Shown one piece after another: positions 41,615 to 48,904 of a stretch of DNA of 64,000 bases. The stretch lies in IMG/VR virus record IMGVR_UViG_3300023202_000383, positions 124,001 to 188,000 of that record, one strand, 5' to 3'. A program made the translations under genes and the position numbers. Position 1 is the first letter of the stretch. Every line of letters begins with the position of its first letter. The notes below the pieces were generated by a model. The model searched no databases, was not told the origin of the DNA, and saw nothing but the letters and a program-made list of their open reading frames with translations.

Positions 41615-43234
41615 ATGCCGAAGGATATCATTTTTGATGAGTCAGTTAGAAGCAAGATCCAAGACGGTCTCAACAAGCTGGCCCAAGCAGTCAGAGTGAC
41701 TTTGGGGCCGACTGGCCGTGTTGTCATGATTGAAAGGGATTTTGGAGACCCTATCATAACGAAGGATGGGGTCACTGTAGCCAAACACATAGATCTTGAA
41801 GATAAGCTGTCGAATATGGCTGCAATGATGGTGCGTCAGGCGGCGTCCAAAACTGCCTCTGAGGCTGGAGATGGCACAACGACTGCTACTATTTATACTG
41901 AAGCAATATATGGTGCTGGTATAAAGAGTGTTCTGGCTGGGGCTAATCCTCAAGATCTCAAAAATGGGATGAATAAAGCTGTACAGGCTATCGTCCATCA
42001 ACTTGAGAGAATGGCTAAGCCTATAACCAGCACAGAAGAGATAAAGCAGGTCGCTGCGTGCAGCGCCAATCAAGACAATATTATAGGGTCTATAATTGCC
42101 GACGCTATGGATAAAGTCGGCAAAGATGGCGTTGTCACAATAGAAGAAGGCAAGACGTTGGATACTTCGGTATCTGTTGTCGATGGTTATCAATTCGATA
42201 AAGGATATATGAGCCAACATTTTGTGACCAATAAGGAAAAGATGGTCGCTGAATACGAGGAGCCCTATATACTGTTGAGCGAAGATCGAATCGACGATCT
42301 TAAAAGCCTCTTGGGGATGCTTGAGCTCGCAATCAAGAAGGGCCAAAGGCCGATAGTTATCATAGCCGATGATTTTGATGATACGGTCATGACGACTTTG
42401 ACTGTCAATCACTTAAGGGGGTCGTTGAAAGTGTTGGCTATAAAGTCCCCCGGCTTTGGCGACAGACGTAAGCAGATGATGGAAGATATAGCAACAATAA
42501 CTGGTGCGAAGGTCTTCTCCAAGGCATCTGGCGTGACAATGAAGAATCCTAGCATAGACGCTTTTGGGTCGTGCGAAAAGATCACTGCGTCTGATGATTC
42601 CACTATTATAGTGGAAGGTGCTGGCGATGAATCTGAAATAGAAGAAAGAATAAATCAGATCAGGACTCAGCTCGAATCTGTTGGTGGCGATTTTGATAAA
42701 GAAAAGCTCCAAGAAAGGCTTTCTAAGCTGATAGGCGGCGTTGCTAGAATTGTCGTCGGCGGTGCTACAGAAGTTGAAGTTAGAGAAAAGAAAGATCGCA
42801 TCGACGACGCTTTACATGCTTGCAAAGCTGCTGTTCAAGAAGGAATATTGCCTGGCGGTGGTGTTGCTGTTCTACGAGCTTTCCAATCTGTTTCTCTGGA
42901 GTTTGATTCTAGAGATGAGGAAATGGGAGTTGGCATAATATTCAAAGCCATAGAAGATCCAATAAGGCAAATCGCCAAGAATACTGGCAAGGATGATGGT
43001 GCTGTTCTCGCTAAAGTGATGGAAAGCAGCGATGCCAACTTTGGGTTCAATGCTGCCAAGGATTCCTTCGAAAATCTGATCGACGCTGGCATAATCGTCC
43101 CAGCCAAGGTTGAGAGGATTGCATTGCAAAATGCCGCATCTATAGCTGCCTTACTTCTTGCTACGGATTGCATGATATCTATAATTCCTGAAGTCGCACC
43201 CGCACAGCCTGACGGGATATATCCAGGGATGTAG
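41615..43234 (+). CDS. groEL: chaperonin GroEL
   Basis: TLGPTGR, ITKDGVTVAK, GDGTTTAT, PGFGDRRK, GGGVA. Confidence 0.97.
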   Translation: MPKDIIFDESVRSKIQDGLNKLAQAVRVTLGPTGRVVMIERDFGDPIITKDGVTVAKHIDLEDKLSNMAAMMVRQAASKTASEAGDGTTTATIYTEAIYGAGIKSVLAGANPQDLKNGMNKAVQAIVHQLERMAKPITSTEEIKQVAACSANQDNIIGSIIADAMDKVGKDGVVTIEEGKTLDTSVSVVDGYQFDKGYMSQHFVTNKEKMVAEYEEPYILLSEDRIDDLKSLLGMLELAIKKGQRPIVIIADDFDDTVMTTLTVNHLRGSLKVLAIKSPGFGDRRKQMMEDIATITGAKVFSKASGVTMKNPSIDAFGSCEKITASDDSTIIVEGAGDESEIEERINQIRTQLESVGGDFDKEKLQERLSKLIGGVARIVVGGATEVEVREKKDRIDDALHACKAAVQEGILPGGGVAVLRAFQSVSLEFDSRDEEMGVGIIFKAIEDPIRQIAKNTGKDDGAVLAKVMESSDANFGFNAAKDSFENLIDAGIIVPAKVERIALQNAASIAALLLATDCMISIIPEVAPAQPDGIYPGM

Positions 43235-43250
43235 TCAAAGATATCATGGA

Positions 43251-44363
43251 ATGATTTCTGATAGATTAGATACGGCCTTGGAGCAGGTCGGTCACTGGAG
43301 ACCCCATACTGGTGGCCGAGTTAGATTTACTGCATATCCAGAGAAATATCCAGACTCGATGGACAAATTAGATTCATCTGGTAAAATCAAAAAGAAGCGA
43401 AAGAAGAAAAAAGGCAAGTTCTTCGAAGATTCTAGTAATCTGACCGTGTATCTATATATACCAGAATGGGACGATTACGATGCTTTTTCTGGCAGCGAAG
43501 AAGATCTACGGAAAGAATTATTCGGCTATCTTCAAAAATATGATTCGAAGCAATTGTTTAATATAGCCAAAGAAGGCCATGATTTTAAATTATATTATGA
43601 TTTGCCAAGTAAAAACGCTGTGATCAGGAATCTTATTGATAATTTAATAGATCGTGCTCATGAGCGTGCGAAGGAAGATACAATGCATAGCCCAAGAATT
43701 CCTCCAAAAGGCCCTAATCCATATAGAGCCAGGGCACATAATCCAATTAGGTCGTGGGTTGGTGCTGAAAATTTGGATAAAGTAGATGATGTTTTAAATG
43801 AATTAGTAAGTAGCGGCGCTGTTGCTATGGGCGATGTGGCGGCATTTCATGATGTCACTAAGAATGCTGCCACTCACGGAGGATACGGAAGAGTTGACGG
43901 GCTTAGCGGAGGAGACCACAAACAACCGAAACCGGGTCGACTACTTCGGAAAACGAAAAAGAAAAAGAAGAGCAAAGGGAAGCCAAAAAAGATACATTCC
44001 CGGCTCACCCATAAACTCGCTGGGATAAATGAGGAAGGTGAGCGTCCTCTAAGTGTACACCCGGGGGAATTATTAGATAACACTGTTGAAGATATATATT
44101 GGATGTTCCGCAAGTTGCAGTCTAGAGAGAAGCGGACGGAAGATGCTATTCATAAATTAAGATATGGATTGTTGTTCCTAAAAAATTTCAAATCCAGTGT
44201 AGAGCCTGAGAAACAGAGATATTGGTTTAGAAGGGCAGTTGATAGTCTTGAAGCAGTAGCTGGATTCTACGCGGATACAGATGAGGGTAAAGAGCTGGAC
44301 AGTGTTTTGAAGTCGCTCGATAAGTATATAAAATTAGTAAATGATCGATCTGAATCTGACTAA
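43251..44363 (+). CDS. hypothetical protein with Lys-rich patches
   Basis: 370-aa ORF. Confidence 0.75.
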   Translation: MISDRLDTALEQVGHWRPHTGGRVRFTAYPEKYPDSMDKLDSSGKIKKKRKKKKGKFFEDSSNLTVYLYIPEWDDYDAFSGSEEDLRKELFGYLQKYDSKQLFNIAKEGHDFKLYYDLPSKNAVIRNLIDNLIDRAHERAKEDTMHSPRIPPKGPNPYRARAHNPIRSWVGAENLDKVDDVLNELVSSGAVAMGDVAAFHDVTKNAATHGGYGRVDGLSGGDHKQPKPGRLLRKTKKKKKSKGKPKKIHSRLTHKLAGINEEGERPLSVHPGELLDNTVEDIYWMFRKLQSREKRTEDAIHKLRYGLLFLKNFKSSVEPEKQRYWFRRAVDSLEAVAGFYADTDEGKELDSVLKSLDKYIKLVNDRSESD

Positions 44364-44366
44364 TTT

Positions 44367-44792
44367 ATGAAGAAGAAGCCATATCTTAGAATAGGTAGAG
44401 ACGAGCCAGCTGAGGGGAAAGCTGTATATGAGTTGGTCGTAGACGACTACTTTGAGGAACTCAATCCTCCGAAACAGCTTGGTGTCGAATCGATGAGTCC
44501 AGCAATGTATTATGTCACTAGTGGTGACGCTGTGCAGAAAGCGTTGAAGCTTAAGAAAGACTTATACGCTTATGCTGGAAATGCAAGATCAGCTCTAAAT
44601 TCTATTAAATCTCCATCGAAATCCAGCAAAGAATTTGTCAAAAAATGTTGGTCTGCCGCTTCTAAATGCAATCAGCTTATAAAGGATTTAGAAGCAGCTC
44701 GTGGGGATGATGTGTTCTTAGAGACCGAGAGAGACATCGAGGGTAAATTAAAATGCATTCCTAAAAACCCACGAATTAAGAAGTCTTCTTAA
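44367..44792 (+). CDS. hypothetical protein
   Basis: 141-aa ORF. Confidence 0.7.
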   Translation: MKKKPYLRIGRDEPAEGKAVYELVVDDYFEELNPPKQLGVESMSPAMYYVTSGDAVQKALKLKKDLYAYAGNARSALNSIKSPSKSSKEFVKKCWSAASKCNQLIKDLEAARGDDVFLETERDIEGKLKCIPKNPRIKKSS

Positions 44793-45209
44793 GTCCTCTA
44801 GAGACCCATTGTTGCTTATTGTTTCCGTCGAATCTTCTGGGCCTATTTGATCTGTTGTATTTCTGTTTGCAGATGCCCTATCTATCCATAATATATGATC
44901 AAATAAGTGCTTAGATGCTTTGATTTCATCTTTATTTCTTACGCCTACTATAATATTGTGATTTTCAAGTCCCTTGGATACTGGATAACTCGGATCCTTG
45001 GCTTGCTTTTCCCTTCCGAATTGATATAGGTCATCTCTCAAATCTTTTTTGTTGGCAACTACGTAATCAACATCTAAGTTATTTGAATCGGCAAAATCTT
45101 GCATGATTATATCAGATGTGTTTATAGCAGACATATTAAGCTTTTCTGCTAACATATCTGCGGCGGCGCTTTTGCCGGATTCGCTATATCCAAGAATCAT
45201 GATGTTCAT
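44748..45209 (-). CDS. P-loop nucleotide kinase-like (dNMP kinase)
   Basis: ILGYSESGKSAAA Walker A; VGVRNKDE; ISNNGSLEDL. Confidence 0.7.
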   Translation of the reverse strand: MNIMILGYSESGKSAAADMLAEKLNMSAINTSDIIMQDFADSNNLDVDYVVANKKDLRDDLYQFGREKQAKDPSYPVSKGLENHNIIVGVRNKDEIKASKHLFDHILWIDRASANRNTTDQIGPEDSTETISNNGSLEDLRRLLNSWVFRNAF

Positions 45210-45556
45210 TGCACATTCCAAACATAATAGGCTGCTATCAAACTTGCGCCAACTGTCGATATGATAGCAACAATCACGCATATTGTTGCTATCCTGTTGT
45301 TGGTTTTGTCGTGGTTTTCTTCGGGGTCTTGCTCGTCTATTCCCATCAATTTGTTCCTGTTATTTCTGAGTTTTGTCAGCTGGATCTCTCCGATTTTCAA
45401 CACATCATACTCTGATTTGCTTATCTGCATAATGTCGCTTGGTGTCTTGCCGTCTTGCAATAAACTTAATGCGACGTATTCAAAGCTTATAGCTTGGTCG
45501 ACACCACTATAGTAGTTACCATTATCATCATAGGCTTTATATTTAAAGTATCGCAT
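45206..45556 (-). CDS. membrane protein with a PilC/GspF-like N-terminal domain
   Basis: MRYFKYKAYDDNG...G...A.S...VA..L...G..P..I pattern; C-terminal TM helix. Confidence 0.55.
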   Translation of the reverse strand: MRYFKYKAYDDNGNYYSGVDQAISFEYVALSLLQDGKTPSDIMQISKSEYDVLKIGEIQLTKLRNNRNKLMGIDEQDPEENHDKTNNRIATICVIVAIISTVGASLIAAYYVWNVQ

Positions 45557-45750
45557 TGGAGGTTGCTGTGGATTTATTGGTAAAATACCAGTCTGATGAG
45601 ATAAGGGAGCATATGTCTGTTAAATATGCCAAAAGAGGCGATGCTGGCATAGATCTATATAATGCAAGTGGTAAAGAAATAATCATCAAACCAGACACTA
45701 AAGAACGGGGATCGTGGCGCACCGTCTTTCTTAGAAAAATAATCGCATAG
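45556..45750 (+). pseudogene. dUTPase 5' fragment
   Basis: KYAKRGDAGIDLY (motif I), then stop. Confidence 0.7.
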
Positions 45751-45823
45751 CACATGCCAGCCAATCGAGGTGGTGATTTCTTGTCGTCAACTATTTTAAT
45801 TTATGTAGATTAGGGGCAGCAAA

Positions 45824-47014
45824 ATGCCATTGGTCAAAGTACTACCAACTGCTAATTATAAAGAACTTCCAAAATTAAAGCAGTTCACAAAAGGTTCTGT
45901 TGGCATCGACCTATATTGCGCATCCGATGCCACAATCATGCCCAGGCAAAAAATAGATATTCCATGTGCTATAAAATTAGAATTGCCAAAAGGGTATTAT
46001 GCTAGGATTACCGGCAGATCTTCATCATTCATGCTTGGTATAGATATTAGAGAAGGCATAATCGACCAAGACTACAGGGGCGAGATTTATATTGGTGCCT
46101 ATAATTTTAGCGATGAGACGGTCACGATTAGCAGAGGTGACCGGCTAGCTCAAATGCTAATATCAAAATACGAGGATATAAGCATTGAGTACGTTGAATC
46201 AATAAATGATACTCAGAGGGGAGACGGGGGTTTTGGCAGCACAGATGTTACTGTTGGGGTAGAACATGCCAATTTTATCAATAAAGAATTCTTAGATGAA
46301 TTCTACATAAAAAAAGGGCTGTCTGCTGCCGAAATCGCCAAGAGATTCAACGTTGGCAAAACAACAGTACTGAGGAAAATGACAGAAAATGGTGTTGCCG
46401 CCTTAAATTCGTGGGAAAGACATCCACCAGAATTAGACGAATTACAGAGCATGCTAATTGCCGGGTCTATAATCGGCGATTTATCCATCAAGCATAGCGA
46501 GGCTTGGACGCATGCCAGGTGTGACTTCGCACACGGGCCTAATCAAATAGACTACTTAAGATATAAAAAAGACATAATGGCGAAATTCGTTACAATGGAC
46601 ATAAATTCTAAATATAACAAAGAATTCGATTCCGTCACTTTTTATTTCTCGACCATCACACATCCAATATTCACGCGACTGAGGGAGGAATATTATCCTA
46701 ATGGTGTGAAAGTGGTGACCGATAAGCTTTTGAATAGATTGAATCCTTTTTCACTATCTGTTTGGTATATGGACGATGGGTCTCTGCACATTAGTAATAG
46801 CAATAGTAGGTGGATATCTATGCATGTGGAGGGGTTTGACCCCGACTCACAAGTTAGAATCTTGTCGTGGCTTAATGATAACAGGTATGAGGCTAAATTC
46901 AGAAACGACGGGAAAGGCCATAGGTTTATCGTTCTCAATTCGATTGGTACAAGAAGGCTTATAGACACAGTAGAACCACACATCATCCCATGCATGCAAT
47001 ACAAAATTAGGTAA
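45824..47014 (+). CDS. dut: dUTPase fused to HTH and LAGLIDADG endonuclease
   Basis: GSVGIDL, GRSS, GIIDQDYRGEI, GDRLAQM, RGDGGFGST; then IAGSIIGDLSI and LSVWYMDDGS. Confidence 0.88.
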   Translation: MPLVKVLPTANYKELPKLKQFTKGSVGIDLYCASDATIMPRQKIDIPCAIKLELPKGYYARITGRSSSFMLGIDIREGIIDQDYRGEIYIGAYNFSDETVTISRGDRLAQMLISKYEDISIEYVESINDTQRGDGGFGSTDVTVGVEHANFINKEFLDEFYIKKGLSAAEIAKRFNVGKTTVLRKMTENGVAALNSWERHPPELDELQSMLIAGSIIGDLSIKHSEAWTHARCDFAHGPNQIDYLRYKKDIMAKFVTMDINSKYNKEFDSVTFYFSTITHPIFTRLREEYYPNGVKVVTDKLLNRLNPFSLSVWYMDDGSLHISNSNSRWISMHVEGFDPDSQVRILSWLNDNRYEAKFRNDGKGHRFIVLNSIGTRRLIDTVEPHIIPCMQYKIR

Positions 47015-47019
47015 CTAGC

Positions 47020-47112
47020 GTGATTCCGTATTTAAGTGCTAACATCATAGAAGTGAATTCGTTGCCGGACACCGAGAGAGAGCATAGTGGTTTTGGGAAT
47101 TCCGGTCTTTAA
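47020..47112 (+). pseudogene. dUTPase 3' fragment
   Basis: VIPYLSANIIEVNSLPDTEREHSGFGNSGL* resembles motif V. Confidence 0.7.
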
Positions 47113-47130
47113 TAGTTCAAAGATAATAAA

Positions 47131-47415
47131 ATGTTTTTAGTGGTATATTGTAAAATTAGTGATGATAAATCCGAAGGCATAGAGCTATCGACTGTATATT
47201 TTGGTGGTGTCTGTGCGACTCAAGAAGAAGCGGATAATGTCGCAACTGAATGCGTTAGCAACACACAGGGCGGGATAATAATACCTAGAATATTGCAGTT
47301 TGAAGGCAATATGTTTGATGCCATAGATGAGGTCATTGTCCAGCTTGATAAAATGATACAAAGAATGCAAGACAATGATGATATTATGCGGAATACTAAA
47401 TATTATAAGAGGTAG
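47131..47415 (+). CDS. hypothetical protein
   Basis: 94-aa ORF. Confidence 0.7.
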   Translation: MFLVVYCKISDDKSEGIELSTVYFGGVCATQEEADNVATECVSNTQGGIIIPRILQFEGNMFDAIDEVIVQLDKMIQRMQDNDDIMRNTKYYKR

Positions 47416-48135
47416 TTATTTCTTGTTTGCTCTTGATTTTATGGTATAATCCTTGCCTAAAGGATGCATTTGTTTTTCTATTGTGCATTGAATCTTTATA
47501 GCTCTAATTTTATTTGAATCTTTTACGGTTTTAACGAAGAAGCAATTTACATTTATGCTTCTTGCATGGATGTATCCAAATTCAGATAGGAAACTGATCA
47601 GTTTTGTTTTGTCTTGGTTTGAATTTGCTTCAGCAACAATCACATCTGGCTTGTTGGATTTTAGGTCCATGCCACTTAAAACATCAAGCTCGTGACCTTC
47701 TACATCTATAGAAATGAAGTTGATATGTCTATTGGGCAAGACATTAGACAGGGGTTTGCATATGACTTTGTGATTCTTGACGCCAGGATATTCTAATTTC
47801 CTGCCTCGATATCTCTTTTTTAGGTCATTTTCGTCAACGTTTATCCCAGACAAAAGACCTATGTCCTCTGCCATAAAGTCAACAACGTATTCTTTAGACC
47901 CACATGCTATCTCTAGGCATTTAGAGTTTGGTCGATTTGATTTGCACAACGGAAAATATTTTGGATGCGGTTCTATGCATATGCCGTCCCACCCGGCTAA
48001 CTCGAACGAATATGAATTACTTAAATGTACACCATCAAATGCACCAACGTCTACGTAAAACCCATCTGGCTTCCTGTCAAAGAATTCCCATAATAAGTAA
48101 TCCTCCCCATGCTGACTATAGTATTTATATTCCAT
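47416..48135 (-). CDS. FkbM-family methyltransferase
   Basis: YSQHGED, VDVGAFDGVHLSNS, GICIEP, ISIDVEGHE. Confidence 0.92.
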   Translation of the reverse strand: MEYKYYSQHGEDYLLWEFFDRKPDGFYVDVGAFDGVHLSNSYSFELAGWDGICIEPHPKYFPLCKSNRPNSKCLEIACGSKEYVVDFMAEDIGLLSGINVDENDLKKRYRGRKLEYPGVKNHKVICKPLSNVLPNRHINFISIDVEGHELDVLSGMDLKSNKPDVIVAEANSNQDKTKLISFLSEFGYIHARSINVNCFFVKTVKDSNKIRAIKIQCTIEKQMHPLGKDYTIKSRANKK

Positions 48136-48904
48136 GAAAATAGCTCATATAATAAATCCAGTTAATGTTAAACCGAATTCCAATCTCGGTATTGCTCAAC
48201 CAATAACATTTAAGACGATGGAAATCGCCAAAGATCATGTTAAAAATACTATCGATGTTAAACTATATTCTGCACAATACAAAGAAGATAGGGTGGCTGT
48301 GCCTGCCGGATTTATTATGACCCCGGACCTAAAAGAATCGGTGTTGGATTATGGTAAATTTAATATTCCTAGGAAGTTGCCTATTCTTGACGATATAATA
48401 AGAAGGTTACATCATTACTCCAACGAAGATTATTTGATATATACAAATGCTGACATAGCATTGATGCCAAATTTTTATCAAGAAGTTGCAAGATATATAG
48501 ACGATGGGCACGATGCCATCGAAATAACAAGAAGAACGATACCATCTACATATAGTGATGTGAGCCAGATAAAAAAGATGTTTAAATTAAAAGGGAAGAA
48601 GCATCCCGGCCACGATTGTTTTGTGTTCCACGCGTCTCTGTTTCAGAGAATGTTTGAATTGGCCAAAGTTTGTATAGGTGCACCTGCTGTCGGTAAGTGC
48701 ATGTTGTTGAACTTGCGGTGCTTCGCTAAGAAATTTATCAGGGTCACTGATCGTCATTTAACATTCCATATTGGTGACGATAAGATTTGGAATAAATATG
48801 CTGACTATAAAGAATACAATAGGTCAGAATATAGAAAAGCACACAATAGACTGCTAGTTAGGCATGCAATCCCAAATAGACTATTGGAATGGGCCGAGCT
48901 ATGA
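48134..48904 (+). CDS. glycosyltransferase-like protein
   Basis: YLIYTNADIAL DxD-like motif; HPGHDCFVF. Confidence 0.6.
   Translation: MKIAHIINPVNVKPNSNLGIAQPITFKTMEIAKDHVKNTIDVKLYSAQYKEDRVAVPAGFIMTPDLKESVLDYGKFNIPRKLPILDDIIRRLHHYSNEDYLIYTNADIALMPNFYQEVARYIDDGHDAIEITRRTIPSTYSDVSQIKKMFKLKGKKHPGHDCFVFHASLFQRMFELAKVCIGAPAVGKCMLLNLRCFAKKFIRVTDRHLTFHIGDDKIWNKYADYKEYNRSEYRKAHNRLLVRHAIPNRLLEWAEL

What the first reader, a model, noticed from the sequence alone, without database searches (positions are those of the whole stretch)
45556..47112. dUTPase-LAGLIDADG fusion nested between the 5' and 3' remnants of another dUTPase
Seen: a 5' fragment with motif I (GDAGIDLY, 45556-45750), a complete dUTPase fused in-frame to HTH and LAGLIDADG domains, and a 3' fragment with motif V (TEREHSGFGNSG, 47020-47112). 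There are no intein motifs. Inference: a homing endonuclease travels fused to a full replacement copy of its target gene and inserted into the resident allele.
Basis: partly seen in the sequence, partly recalled or inferred. Interest (0 to 1): 0.6.

Follow-up and report, generated by a model that had tools for sequence, protein, structure and literature searches.

The report
dUTPase–homing endonuclease cassette inside dead dUTPase
A large T4-like phage carries its only dUTPase fused in frame to an intact LAGLIDADG homing endonuclease, and this gene sits between the two ends of a second, unrelated dUTPase gene that has lost its middle third. This looks like a selfish nuclease gene replacing a resident gene with the copy it brought along.

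Summary
ORF 45824-47014 encodes a 396-aa protein: a complete trimeric-type dUTPase, a short linker, an HTH, and a complete I-SceI-family LAGLIDADG endonuclease with both catalytic Asp. It has no intein or intron features.

The flanking ORFlets (45568-~45708 and 47011-47112) are the 3rd- and 2nd-best dUTPase matches among 6,915 six-frame segments of the 256-kb genome. They lie on the same strand, are colinear, and cover profile positions 14-41 and 113-141. Motifs II-IV (~70 codons) are missing.

Each fragment, alone or joined, falls in a small clade of phage dUTPases (P0116-P0120; support 97-100). They are only 29% identical to the fused dUTPase, although an AU test does not formally exclude a sister relation (p 0.165).

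Independent contigs bridge both junctions. The fusion occurs in two other contigs (65% and 50% identity), in otherwise unrelated contexts and without remnants. The fusion is therefore a stable unit, probably mobile, and nesting is not obligatory.

The event is a replacement of the resident gene's centre, not a clean insertion. That the endonuclease drove it is inferred, not shown. The closest analogues are the fungal mitochondrial mobile endonuclease ORFs (mORFs) that form gene hybrids, and the free-standing homing endonuclease genes (HEGs) of T4-type phages. I rate it a new variant of a known kind, of moderate interest.

The parts
45206..45556 (-). Divergent upstream neighbour, a 116-aa protein of unknown function with a C-terminal hydrophobic stretch. 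It marks the left edge of the former resident dut locus.
   Evidence: ORF list. No Pfam or PHROG family found. No relatives in viral contigs.
45558..45750 (+). 5' remnant of the resident dUTPase. It has a GGAGG Shine-Dalgarno sequence (45558-45562) and a GTG start (45568). About 47 codons are dUTPase-like, including motif I (GDAGIDLY), up to ~45708. Unrelated codons then follow to the TAG stop at 45748-45750.
   Evidence: Own dUTPase profile: E 0.015, positions 14-41, third best of 6,915 segments. An exhaustive search of 1.84 billion representative proteins finds only P0116 (49% identity, E 5e-4). The fragment alone falls in the P0116-P0120 clade, SH-aLRT 97.
45751..45823 (+). 73-nt spacer with stops in all frames. 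It carries the ribosome-binding region (AGGGG) of the fusion gene and is presumably the left end of the incoming DNA.
   Evidence: Three-frame translation. No alignable DNA with L010 or L011 upstream regions.
45824..46246 (+). dUTPase domain of the fusion (aa 1-141). All five motifs are present. It is the only dUTPase in the 256-kb record.
   Evidence: Pfam PF00692 E 4.9e-32. PDB dUTPases match at E 8e-26 with motifs aligned. Only one PF00692 match in the genome. AF2 pLDDT is about 90 or higher for nearly all of aa 1-130.
46247..46270 (+). Variable 8-residue linker (aa 142-149) between dUTPase motif V and the endonuclease module.
   Evidence: 25% and 0% identity among the three fusions, against 51-69% in the two large domains. 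pLDDT below 50 at aa 139-144.
46271..46423 (+). Helix-turn-helix DNA-binding module (aa 150-200), the usual N-terminal module of free-standing phage homing endonucleases.
   Evidence: HTH_7 E 1.3e-4 at aa 163-188. PHROG HNH-endonuclease N-terminal modules match aa 150-208. The free-standing relatives P0004, L006 and L007 start at this point.
46424..47014 (+). I-SceI-family (LAGLIDADG_2) endonuclease core (aa 201-396) plus the TAA stop. The two LAGLIDADG motifs carry the catalytic Asp219 (46478-46480) and Asp318 (46775-46777).
   Evidence: PF03161 E 5.7e-28. PDB 6x1j E 2.7e-9, aligned over residues 24-227 of 231. I-SceI E 3e-8. Both motifs and the C-terminal IIPxMxYK motif are aligned.
47011..47112 (+). 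3' remnant of the resident dUTPase. It has 33 codons, running from just after motif IV through motif V (TEREHSGFGNSG) to the native TAA stop. It overlaps the fusion's stop codon by 4 nt in another frame.
   Evidence: Own dUTPase profile: E 9.4e-4, positions 113-141, second best of 6,915 segments. The fragment alone falls in the P0116-P0120 clade, SH-aLRT 98, on a long terminal branch of 1.53.
47131..47415 (+). Downstream 94-aa gene, starting 18 nt after the remnant's stop. A weak homologue follows the fusion in L010.
   Evidence: BLASTP against L010 7249-7542: 28% identity over 60 aa, pairwise E 5e-6.

Best explanation
A resident dUTPase gene once lay between the 116-aa gene and the 94-aa gene of this T4-like jumbo phage. 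It belonged to the lineage seen today in P0116-P0120.

About 1.3 kb of foreign DNA replaced its central ~210 bp (motifs II-IV). The foreign DNA carries a short leader and a single ORF. In that ORF a complete, divergent dUTPase is fused through an 8-residue linker to a complete free-standing-type homing endonuclease (HTH plus an I-SceI-like LAGLIDADG core).

The phage now depends on the incoming dUTPase, which is the only one in the record. The endonuclease gene is hard to lose because it is part of the same reading frame.

The most likely route (inferred) has three steps. The endonuclease, or another break, cut the resident dut during a mixed infection. Exonucleases widened the gap. Repair then copied the donor's dut-endonuclease gene across the gap. 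Because the two dut genes are too different for homologous crossover inside the gene, the outer ends of the old gene survived as remnants.

Shown: the anatomy, the distinct ancestry of inner and outer genes, the intactness of both inner domains, and recurrence of the fusion in unrelated contexts. Inferred: the order of events in mechanistic detail, endonuclease activity and its target, and whether the protein acts as a fusion.
For: - Fragment identity and colinearity.
- Fragments fall with P0116-P0120, joined (100/99) and each alone (97, 98). Identity is 42% to the L018 dUTPase and 29% to the fused dUTPase.
- The native Shine-Dalgarno sequence and start, and the native stop with close spacing to the next gene, are kept.
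- The inner gene is complete in both halves.
- The endonuclease part matches whole free-standing HTH-LAGLIDADG genes from their first residues.
- Three fusions have co-diverged domains (69/61/65% and 59/41/51%) around a free-varying linker.
- The L010 locus shares only this gene, and weakly the next one, with the 256-kb genome.
- It is the only dUTPase in the record.
- Both junctions are bridged by independent contigs.
- In the P0116-P0120 phages the 3' flank of dut is a variable spot that in L019 holds an HNH endonuclease gene.
Against: - No allele with an intact resident dut was found in reads, viral contigs or protein databases.
- No recognition site or cleavage is known.
- No microhomology or target duplication is evident at the junctions.
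- Base composition does not mark the insert as foreign.
- The AU test does not reject fragments plus fused clade as one group (p 0.165).
- A homologue of the downstream 94-aa gene follows the fusion in L010 too. This is awkward if the cassette ends at the stop codon.
- The two relatives lack remnants.
Confidence: 0.6

Rival explanations
1. The gene was replaced by ordinary illegitimate or short-homology recombination between co-infecting phages. The endonuclease was only a passenger, already fused to the donor's dut, and played no part in making the break.
For: - No target site, no allele lacking the endonuclease gene and no junction signature link the event to the endonuclease.
- The fusion exists stably elsewhere without remnants.
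- One relative (P0003) has Asn and Ser at the two catalytic Asp positions yet keeps the full ORF. The fusion can therefore persist without cleavage.
Against: - The window's endonuclease keeps both catalytic Asp and full-length similarity to I-SceI-family enzymes.
- The replacement is centred on the very gene the endonuclease is attached to. This is what break-and-repair at the homologous locus predicts.
- Endonuclease genes at boundaries of genetic exchange are a documented pattern in phages (PMC10448857, PMC2988022).
Confidence: 0.25
2. The whole nested unit (5' remnant, fusion and 3' remnant, perhaps with the 94-aa gene) is itself the mobile element. The remnants would serve as homology arms for homing into P0116-P0120-type dut genes. 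The relatives L010 and L011 would have lost their arms.
For: - The target site would lie in the deleted centre, which makes the donor immune. This is the standard logic of homing.
- A homologue of the 94-aa gene follows the fusion in L010.
- The 5' remnant sits on a short branch (0.27), as if still constrained.
Against: - L010 and L011 have only 57-62 nt or less on each side, with no trace of dUTPase.
- The remnants abut this phage's own neighbours with native-looking spacing and Shine-Dalgarno sequence.
- The 3' remnant is on a long branch (1.53) and has substitutions at conserved motif V positions, as expected for decay.
Confidence: 0.1
3. The fragments are exons or extein-like pieces of a still functional split gene (group I intron, intein, split-intein 'fractured gene', or translational bypass).
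For: HEGs are most often housed in introns or inteins, and this genome has three canonical inteins.
Against: - No Rfam intron family matches in 44500-48000, even at E 1.
- The fusion has no HINT or intein blocks.
- There are stops in all frames between the pieces.
- Joining the fragments would still lack motifs II-IV, i.e. profile positions 42-112.
Confidence: 0.02
4. The pattern is an assembly chimera, or a tandem duplication of the phage's own dut followed by decay.
For: Metagenome assemblies can join alleles. Duplicated genes decay to fragments.
Against: - The sequence is identical in three runs and in two JGI assemblies, and short contigs cross both junctions.
- The fragments are only 29% identical to the inner dUTPase and fall with another clade at 100/99 support.
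Confidence: 0.03

Closest known systems
Mobile endonuclease ORFs (mORFs) of fungal mitochondria that create gene hybrids: Allomyces macrogynus atp6; Glomus atp6, atp9, cox2 and nad3 (PMC3630166)
   Same: A LAGLIDADG (or GIY-YIG) endonuclease ORF lies in frame behind a foreign copy of host-gene sequence. The displaced native end of the host gene is left downstream as an untranslated remnant. The inserted and native pieces have different phylogenetic origins.
   Different: - In the fungal cases only the C-terminal part is brought in, and it is spliced in frame onto the native 5' part. Here a complete gene with its own start is brought in.
- Here the native 5' end is cut off by a stop and a 73-nt spacer, remnants lie on both sides, and the native centre is deleted.
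- The host here is a phage, not an organelle.
Free-standing homing endonucleases of T4-type phages (seg and mob genes; intronless homing, marker exclusion; mobE in nrdA of Aeh1, mobA in gene 39/60) (PMC2988022, PMC2790892)
   Same: The setting is a T4-like phage. The endonuclease gene sits next to or within a nucleotide-metabolism gene. The expected mechanism is cleavage of the allele that lacks the endonuclease gene, followed by co-conversion of flanking donor sequence. The endonuclease module has the free-standing HTH-plus-nuclease architecture.
   Different: - Those genes have their own start and stop. When they insert inside a gene, they split it into two working pieces.
- Here the endonuclease is translationally fused to a whole enzyme, and the interrupted gene is dead and replaced.
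- Most T4 examples are GIY-YIG or HNH, not I-SceI-type LAGLIDADG.
I-SceI and related monomeric LAGLIDADG_2 enzymes (PDB 1r7m, 6x1j)
   Same: Full-length sequence similarity, both LAGLIDADG motifs with catalytic Asp, and a conserved C-terminal motif.
   Different: Those enzymes are encoded inside mitochondrial group I introns. This one has an added N-terminal HTH and a dUTPase, with no intron.
HEG islands and nuclease genes at boundaries of genetic exchange in phages (PMC10448857)
   Same: An endonuclease gene marks the edge of a segment exchanged between otherwise dissimilar phages. Domain shuffling between HEGs and other genes is seen.
   Different: [quoted passage not shown] Here the exchanged unit is one fused gene, and the recipient's homologue is left as wreckage.

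Membership tests
Trimeric dUTPase (PF00692), fused N-terminal domain | Five conserved motifs (I AGxDL; II (P/G)RSS; III G(V/I)IDxDYRG; IV R(I/L)AQ; V RGxxGFGST) in a ~140-aa beta-barrel domain | tested here: met
   Pfam E 4.9e-32 over profile positions 7-128 of 129. The alignment to human-type dUTPase structures shows all motifs. AF2 pLDDT is above 90 for most of the domain. Enzyme activity was not tested.
Trimeric dUTPase (PF00692), outer fragments as a working gene | Presence of all five motifs in one reading frame | tested here: not met
   Only profile positions 14-41 and 113-141 are present. Positions 42-112 are absent, and stops separate the pieces.
LAGLIDADG_2 / I-SceI family homing endonuclease | Two LAGLIDADG motifs in one chain, each ending in a catalytic acidic residue | tested here: met
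   Motifs at aa 210-222 (Asp219) and aa 311-321 (Asp318) align to 6x1j and I-SceI. PF03161 E 5.7e-28.
LAGLIDADG_2 / I-SceI family homing endonuclease | Site-specific double-strand cleavage of an allele lacking the endonuclease gene, followed by homing | not testable with these tools
   No such allele or target was found. This needs biochemistry and phage crosses.
Intein | HINT splicing blocks, a nucleophile (Cys, Ser or Thr) at both junctions, and a C-terminal His-Asn | tested here: not met
   The fusion gives no Intein_splicing hit, while the helicase, RecA and portal inteins of the same genome do. The domain follows dUTPase motif V and ends at the protein's stop, so there is no C-extein.
Group I intron-encoded endonuclease | A ribozyme core flanking the ORF, and exons that join to give an intact gene | tested here: not met
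   No intron family matches in 44500-48000 at E up to 1. The joined fragments would lack motifs II-IV.
Free-standing phage homing endonuclease (seg/mob-like, intronless homing) | An independent ORF with its own start, lying between or within genes | tested here: not met
   In the window there is no ATG, GTG or TTG in frame between aa 1 and Met185 of the ORF, and Met185 lies inside the HTH, too late to start the module. The module corresponds to whole free-standing relatives but is fused. P0002 and P0003 have a Met at the equivalent of the relatives' start.
Fungal mitochondrial mORF gene hybrid | A foreign host-gene segment plus an endonuclease ORF in frame, with the native 3' end displaced downstream | tested here: met
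   The foreign dUTPase and the endonuclease form one ORF. The native 3' end lies directly downstream.
Fungal mitochondrial mORF gene hybrid | The foreign segment is joined in frame to the native 5' part, giving a hybrid gene | tested here: not met
   The 5' remnant ends at TAG 45748-45750. A 73-nt spacer with stops in all frames precedes the fusion's own start.
Fractured gene with split intein and HEG (PMC2677866) | Two gene halves, each ending or starting with a split-intein half, that together make the full protein | tested here: not met
   No intein similarity in either fragment, and the central third of the gene is missing.

The most novel reading that the evidence does not exclude
The dut-LAGLIDADG gene is a self-sufficient 'gene-replacement homing cassette'. 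Its endonuclease cuts the conserved core of foreign dUTPase genes. The cassette supplies its own divergent dUTPase, which is immune to cleavage, as a translational fusion. It can therefore invade unrelated phages without homology inside the target gene, destroy the resident allele, and make the host phage dependent on the invader. This would be an addiction-like strategy for a homing endonuclease, with the fusion guaranteeing expression and blocking clean loss.
Probability: 0.25. Interest if true: 0.75.

Novelty: new variant of a known kind. Interest (0 to 1): 0.55.

Why it matters
Homing endonuclease genes are thought to survive by hiding in introns or inteins, or by sitting between genes. 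Here one is welded to a complete metabolic enzyme and lies inside the wreck of the enzyme gene it displaced.

If the endonuclease made the break, this is a route by which selfish nucleases swap whole genes between unrelated phages where there is too little homology for ordinary homing. It would extend to viruses a pattern so far described for fungal mitochondria.

The finding also offers three practical things:
- a natural test of whether a trimeric dUTPase tolerates a 250-residue C-terminal passenger;
- a new I-SceI-family enzyme with an extra HTH, whose target could be found simply by testing dut alleles;
- a relative (P0003) that has lost both catalytic Asp but keeps the frame, a possible step toward domestication.

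The architecture is rare. It forms three clusters among 5.8 billion proteins and is absent from 50,697 deposited phage genomes.

Tried and rejected
- Group I intron: an Rfam scan of 44500-48000 at E up to 1 gave only a sub-threshold snoRNA hit. Rejected.
- Intein: no splicing domain in the fusion, unlike the three true inteins of the genome. Rejected.
- Close phage relatives by DNA: blastn of 44300-48300 against 50,697 phage records gave no match.
- Relatives of the flanking 116-aa and 94-aa genes in IMG/VR: none. No 'empty' or intact resident locus could therefore be recovered.
- Metagenome scan with the fusion alignment: it returned only plain dUTPases at 41-44% identity, because both search patterns fell in the dUTPase part.
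- Reads: three runs of one study hold the locus unchanged, with no alternative allele, joints or loose ends. These are contigs, so rare variants would be missed.
- Junction signatures: no meaningful direct repeats or microhomology. No DNA homology to L010 or L011 beyond the ORF. No compositional break.
- Kinase linkage: the nearby dNMP-kinase-like gene is not specifically related to the kinases that precede dut in the P0116-P0120 phages.
- AU test of 'fragments plus fused dUTPases as one clade': the constrained tree's log-likelihood is 18.3 lower, but p is 0.165, so it is not rejected. The separate origin therefore rests on bootstrap and SH-aLRT support and on identity levels.
- A possible continuation of the 5' remnant in another frame (TGIVA at ~45712-45726) is too short to evaluate. 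The left breakpoint is therefore given as 45705-45750.
- C-terminal extensions of other long dUTPases (P0005, P0007-P0009, P0011, P0012) have no PHROG family and are not endonuclease-like.
- AF2 model of the fusion: the N-terminal half of the LAGLIDADG core was poorly predicted (pLDDT 35-45), so no fold search was run.
Full report
**Setting**

The window is bases 124001-188000 of a 256.5-kb virus record, estimated about 70% complete. The genome encodes a T4-type portal protein, RecA and a helicase. Each of these three is interrupted by a canonical LAGLIDADG intein. A Cpn60-like chaperonin lies just upstream of the region of interest. The same sequence occurs in two JGI assemblies (a 332-kb and a 17-kb contig, 100% identical across the locus). 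It also occurs in three sequencing runs of one study.

**The observation**

ORF 45824-47014 (+) encodes 396 residues.
- Pfam finds dUTPase at aa 19-140 (E 4.9e-32), a resolvase-type HTH at aa 163-188 and LAGLIDADG_2 at aa 212-367 (E 5.7e-28).
- PHROGs agree: dUTPase, LAGLIDADG homing endonuclease, and N-terminal modules of HNH endonucleases for aa 150-208.
- The dUTPase part aligns to solved trimeric dUTPases with all five motifs in place (E 8e-26).
- The C-terminal 250 residues align end to end with I-SceI-family enzymes: 6x1j residues 24-227 of 231 (E 2.7e-9) and I-SceI (E 3e-8). Both LAGLIDADG motifs, their catalytic Asp (Asp219, Asp318) and the conserved C-terminal motif directly before the stop are included.
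- An AlphaFold model gives a confident dUTPase barrel, a disordered stretch at aa 139-144, a confident three-helix HTH and a partly confident LAGLIDADG core.
- There is no intein signature (compared) and no intron-like RNA in 44500-48000.

Pfam does not call the two flanking ORFlets. I therefore built a profile from 68 ordinary dUTPases and scored all 6,915 six-frame stop-to-stop segments of the genome.
- The fusion ranks first (E 1.8e-45).
- The 3' ORFlet ranks second (E 9.4e-4, profile positions 113-141).
- The 5' ORFlet ranks third (E 0.015, positions 14-41).
- Everything else scores E 0.46 or worse.

The two pieces lie on the same strand, are colinear, and directly abut the only dUTPase gene of the record. 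The 5' piece keeps a GGAGG Shine-Dalgarno sequence (45558-45562) five bases before a GTG (45568). The 3' piece keeps its stop (47110-47112) 18 bases before the next gene. Profile positions 42-112 (motifs II, III and IV, about 70 codons) are absent. A 73-nt spacer with stops in all frames separates the 5' piece from the fusion's start. Short independent contigs of run X3 cross both junctions (45553-45886 and 46903-47065), so the arrangement is not an assembly artefact.

**Are the fragments one gene, and whose?**

An exhaustive search of 1.84 billion representative proteins with the 5' piece found, apart from itself, one protein. This is P0116 (49% identity over 43 residues, E 5e-4). P0116 and its four relatives P0117-P0120 are dUTPases of 132-151 residues from phage contigs. 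Those contigs share the gene order PurA, nucleotide kinase, dut, a variable insert, DnaB. I call this group the RES clade.

On a 77-row alignment the fragments are 42%, 39%, 38% and 38% identical to four members of this group. They are 27-29% identical to the three fused dUTPases, and the window's own fused domain ranks 17th of 76.

In maximum-likelihood trees (LG+C20 PMSF) the joined fragments fall with the five RES proteins:
- joined fragments, quick tree: SH-aLRT 99;
- joined fragments, careful tree: ultrafast bootstrap 100, SH-aLRT 99;
- 5' piece alone: SH-aLRT 97;
- 3' piece alone: SH-aLRT 98.

The three fused dUTPases form their own clade (100/99). One caveat applies. With only about 80 informative residues, an AU test does not reject a tree that forces the fragments and the fused clade together (log-likelihood 18.3 lower, p 0.165).

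Even so, the fragments are clearly not recent copies of the inner gene. The 3' piece sits on a long branch (1.53, against a median of 0.44). It carries substitutions at normally conserved motif V positions (RE for RG, GN for GS), as expected for a decaying remnant.

**The fusion elsewhere**

Among 5.8 billion protein clusters only two other proteins share the architecture: P0002 (396 aa, 65% identity) and P0003 (388 aa, 50% identity). None of 50,697 deposited phage genomes has it.
- The domains have diverged in step: dUTPase 69% and 59%, HTH 61% and 41%, LAGLIDADG 65% and 51%. The 8-residue linker is free to vary, at 25% and 0%. The fusion is therefore old relative to these three, and both halves have been maintained.
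- Free-standing relatives of the endonuclease part (P0004, and genes in L006 and L007) begin exactly where the fusion's residue ~148 lies. The fusion thus equals a whole dut plus a whole free-standing HEG with the intervening stop and start lost.
- P0002 and P0003 still have a Met at that point. The window has Ile, and no in-frame start codon before Met185, which lies inside the HTH. Here the endonuclease can be made only as a fusion.
- P0003 has Asn and Ser at the two catalytic Asp positions. It is probably an inactive enzyme in a preserved frame.

**Contexts of the relatives**

Neither relative has dUTPase remnants. In L010 the fusion is flanked by 62 and 57 nt of unrelated sequence. In L011 it directly abuts its neighbours. 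The 10.4-kb L010 locus shares nothing with the 256-kb genome except the fusion gene and a weak homologue of the downstream 94-aa gene (28% identity, pairwise E 5e-6). A gene conserved at 65% identity between otherwise unrelatable genomes fits a unit that moves horizontally. The recurrence of the small downstream gene remains unexplained.

**Mechanism**

The data show three things:
- an inner, complete, foreign-lineage dut-HEG gene;
- an outer, dead, resident-lineage dut that keeps its native translation start and stop next to the phage's own neighbours;
- loss of the resident centre.

The simplest history is that about 1.3 kb of donor DNA replaced about 210 bp of the resident gene. I consider an endonuclease-initiated double-strand break in the resident dut the most likely trigger. 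Gap widening and repair from a co-infecting donor would follow. This matches what free-standing phage HEGs do (PMC2988022, PMC2790892). It also explains why the replacement is centred on the homologous gene. Finally, two genes that are only ~30% identical at the protein level offer no internal homology, so crossovers could not resolve cleanly and the ends survived.

The 3' flank of dut is also a variable spot in the RES phages, and in L019 it holds an HNH endonuclease gene. This shows dut to be a recurrent neighbourhood for such elements.

Nothing here demonstrates cleavage, and the junctions carry no diagnostic signature. Plain illegitimate recombination with the endonuclease as a passenger therefore stays a serious rival. 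So, less likely, does the idea that the remnants are homology arms of the element itself.

**Comparison with known systems**

The nearest described phenomenon is the mobile endonuclease ORF of fungal mitochondria. It brings a foreign C-terminal segment of atp6, atp9, cox2 or nad3 in frame with itself and leaves the native C-terminus downstream (PMC3630166, which cites the Allomyces atp6 case). The present case differs in four ways:
- the host is a phage;
- a whole gene with its own start is brought in, so no hybrid gene forms;
- remnants lie on both sides;
- the native centre is deleted.

Compared with T4 seg and mob genes, the endonuclease is not free-standing but fused. The invaded gene is not split into working halves but killed and substituted. 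I therefore class it as a new variant of a known kind.

**Verdict**

'Inserted' should read 'replaced the centre'. Nesting is not an obligate feature of the fusion. The endonuclease's causal role is untested.

Noticed in passing
L003 805-2892, L004 502-2667, L005 478-3246 (genome C1 ~222.3-224.4 kb, 47.6-49.7 kb, 104.7-107.7 kb; outside the window): Three canonical LAGLIDADG inteins interrupt a helicase, RecA and the T4-type portal protein gp20 of the same phage. The genome is rich in homing elements of the usual kind.
   Followed up: partly
L011 207-1373 (P0003): The most distant fusion has Asn and Ser in place of the two catalytic Asp of the LAGLIDADG motifs, but keeps a full-length open frame and an intact dUTPase. 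It may be an inactivated or domesticated endonuclease domain.
   Followed up: partly
L019 4469-5134; L018 5425-5889; L022 4447-6142; L020 4422: In the phages carrying the resident-type dUTPase (gene order PurA, kinase, dut, DnaB), the slot between dut and dnaB is variable. It holds an HNH endonuclease in L019, Dam-like methyltransferase candidates in L018 and L022, and nothing in L020 and L021.
   Followed up: partly
L018 5001-5420: The closest relative of the 5' remnant (P0116) is itself frameshifted. Motifs I-III are in frame 1, and motifs IV-V (ending GFGSSGR) in another frame after an AT-rich run. This is either a pseudogene or an assembly error.
   Followed up: partly
window 47131-47415 and L010 7249-7542: A small gene (94 and 97 aa, 28% identity, pairwise E 5e-6) follows the fusion in both otherwise unrelated genomes. 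In the window the 3' remnant lies between the fusion and this gene. No model here fully explains this.
   Followed up: partly
P0005, P0007, P0008, P0009, P0011, P0012 (database proteins): Several metagenomic dUTPases carry C-terminal extensions of 147-192 residues with no Pfam or PHROG family. C-terminal passengers on dUTPase are not unique to this case.
   Followed up: partly
L007 3983-5932; P0037: Relatives of the HTH-LAGLIDADG module are fused at their C-terminus to another domain: a DNA methyltransferase in P0037 (PF01555), and a ~390-residue C-terminal extension that was not family-scanned in L007. This is another example of this endonuclease family being welded to an enzyme.
   Followed up: no
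window ~41824-43234 (L012 1-1411): A phage-encoded Cpn60/GroEL-like chaperonin gene (539 aa) lies about 2.5 kb upstream of the locus.
   Followed up: no
window 43251-44363: A 370-aa protein with two poly-lysine tracts (KKKRKKKKGK and KTKKKKKSKGKPKK) and no detected family.
   Followed up: no
window 47416-48135 (-) and 44748-45281 (-): An FkbM-family methyltransferase (PF05050, E 6e-20) and a dNMP-kinase-like P-loop protein (phrog_139, E 9e-9) flank the locus. The kinase shows no specific relation to the kinases that precede dut in the P0116-P0120 phages.
   Followed up: partly
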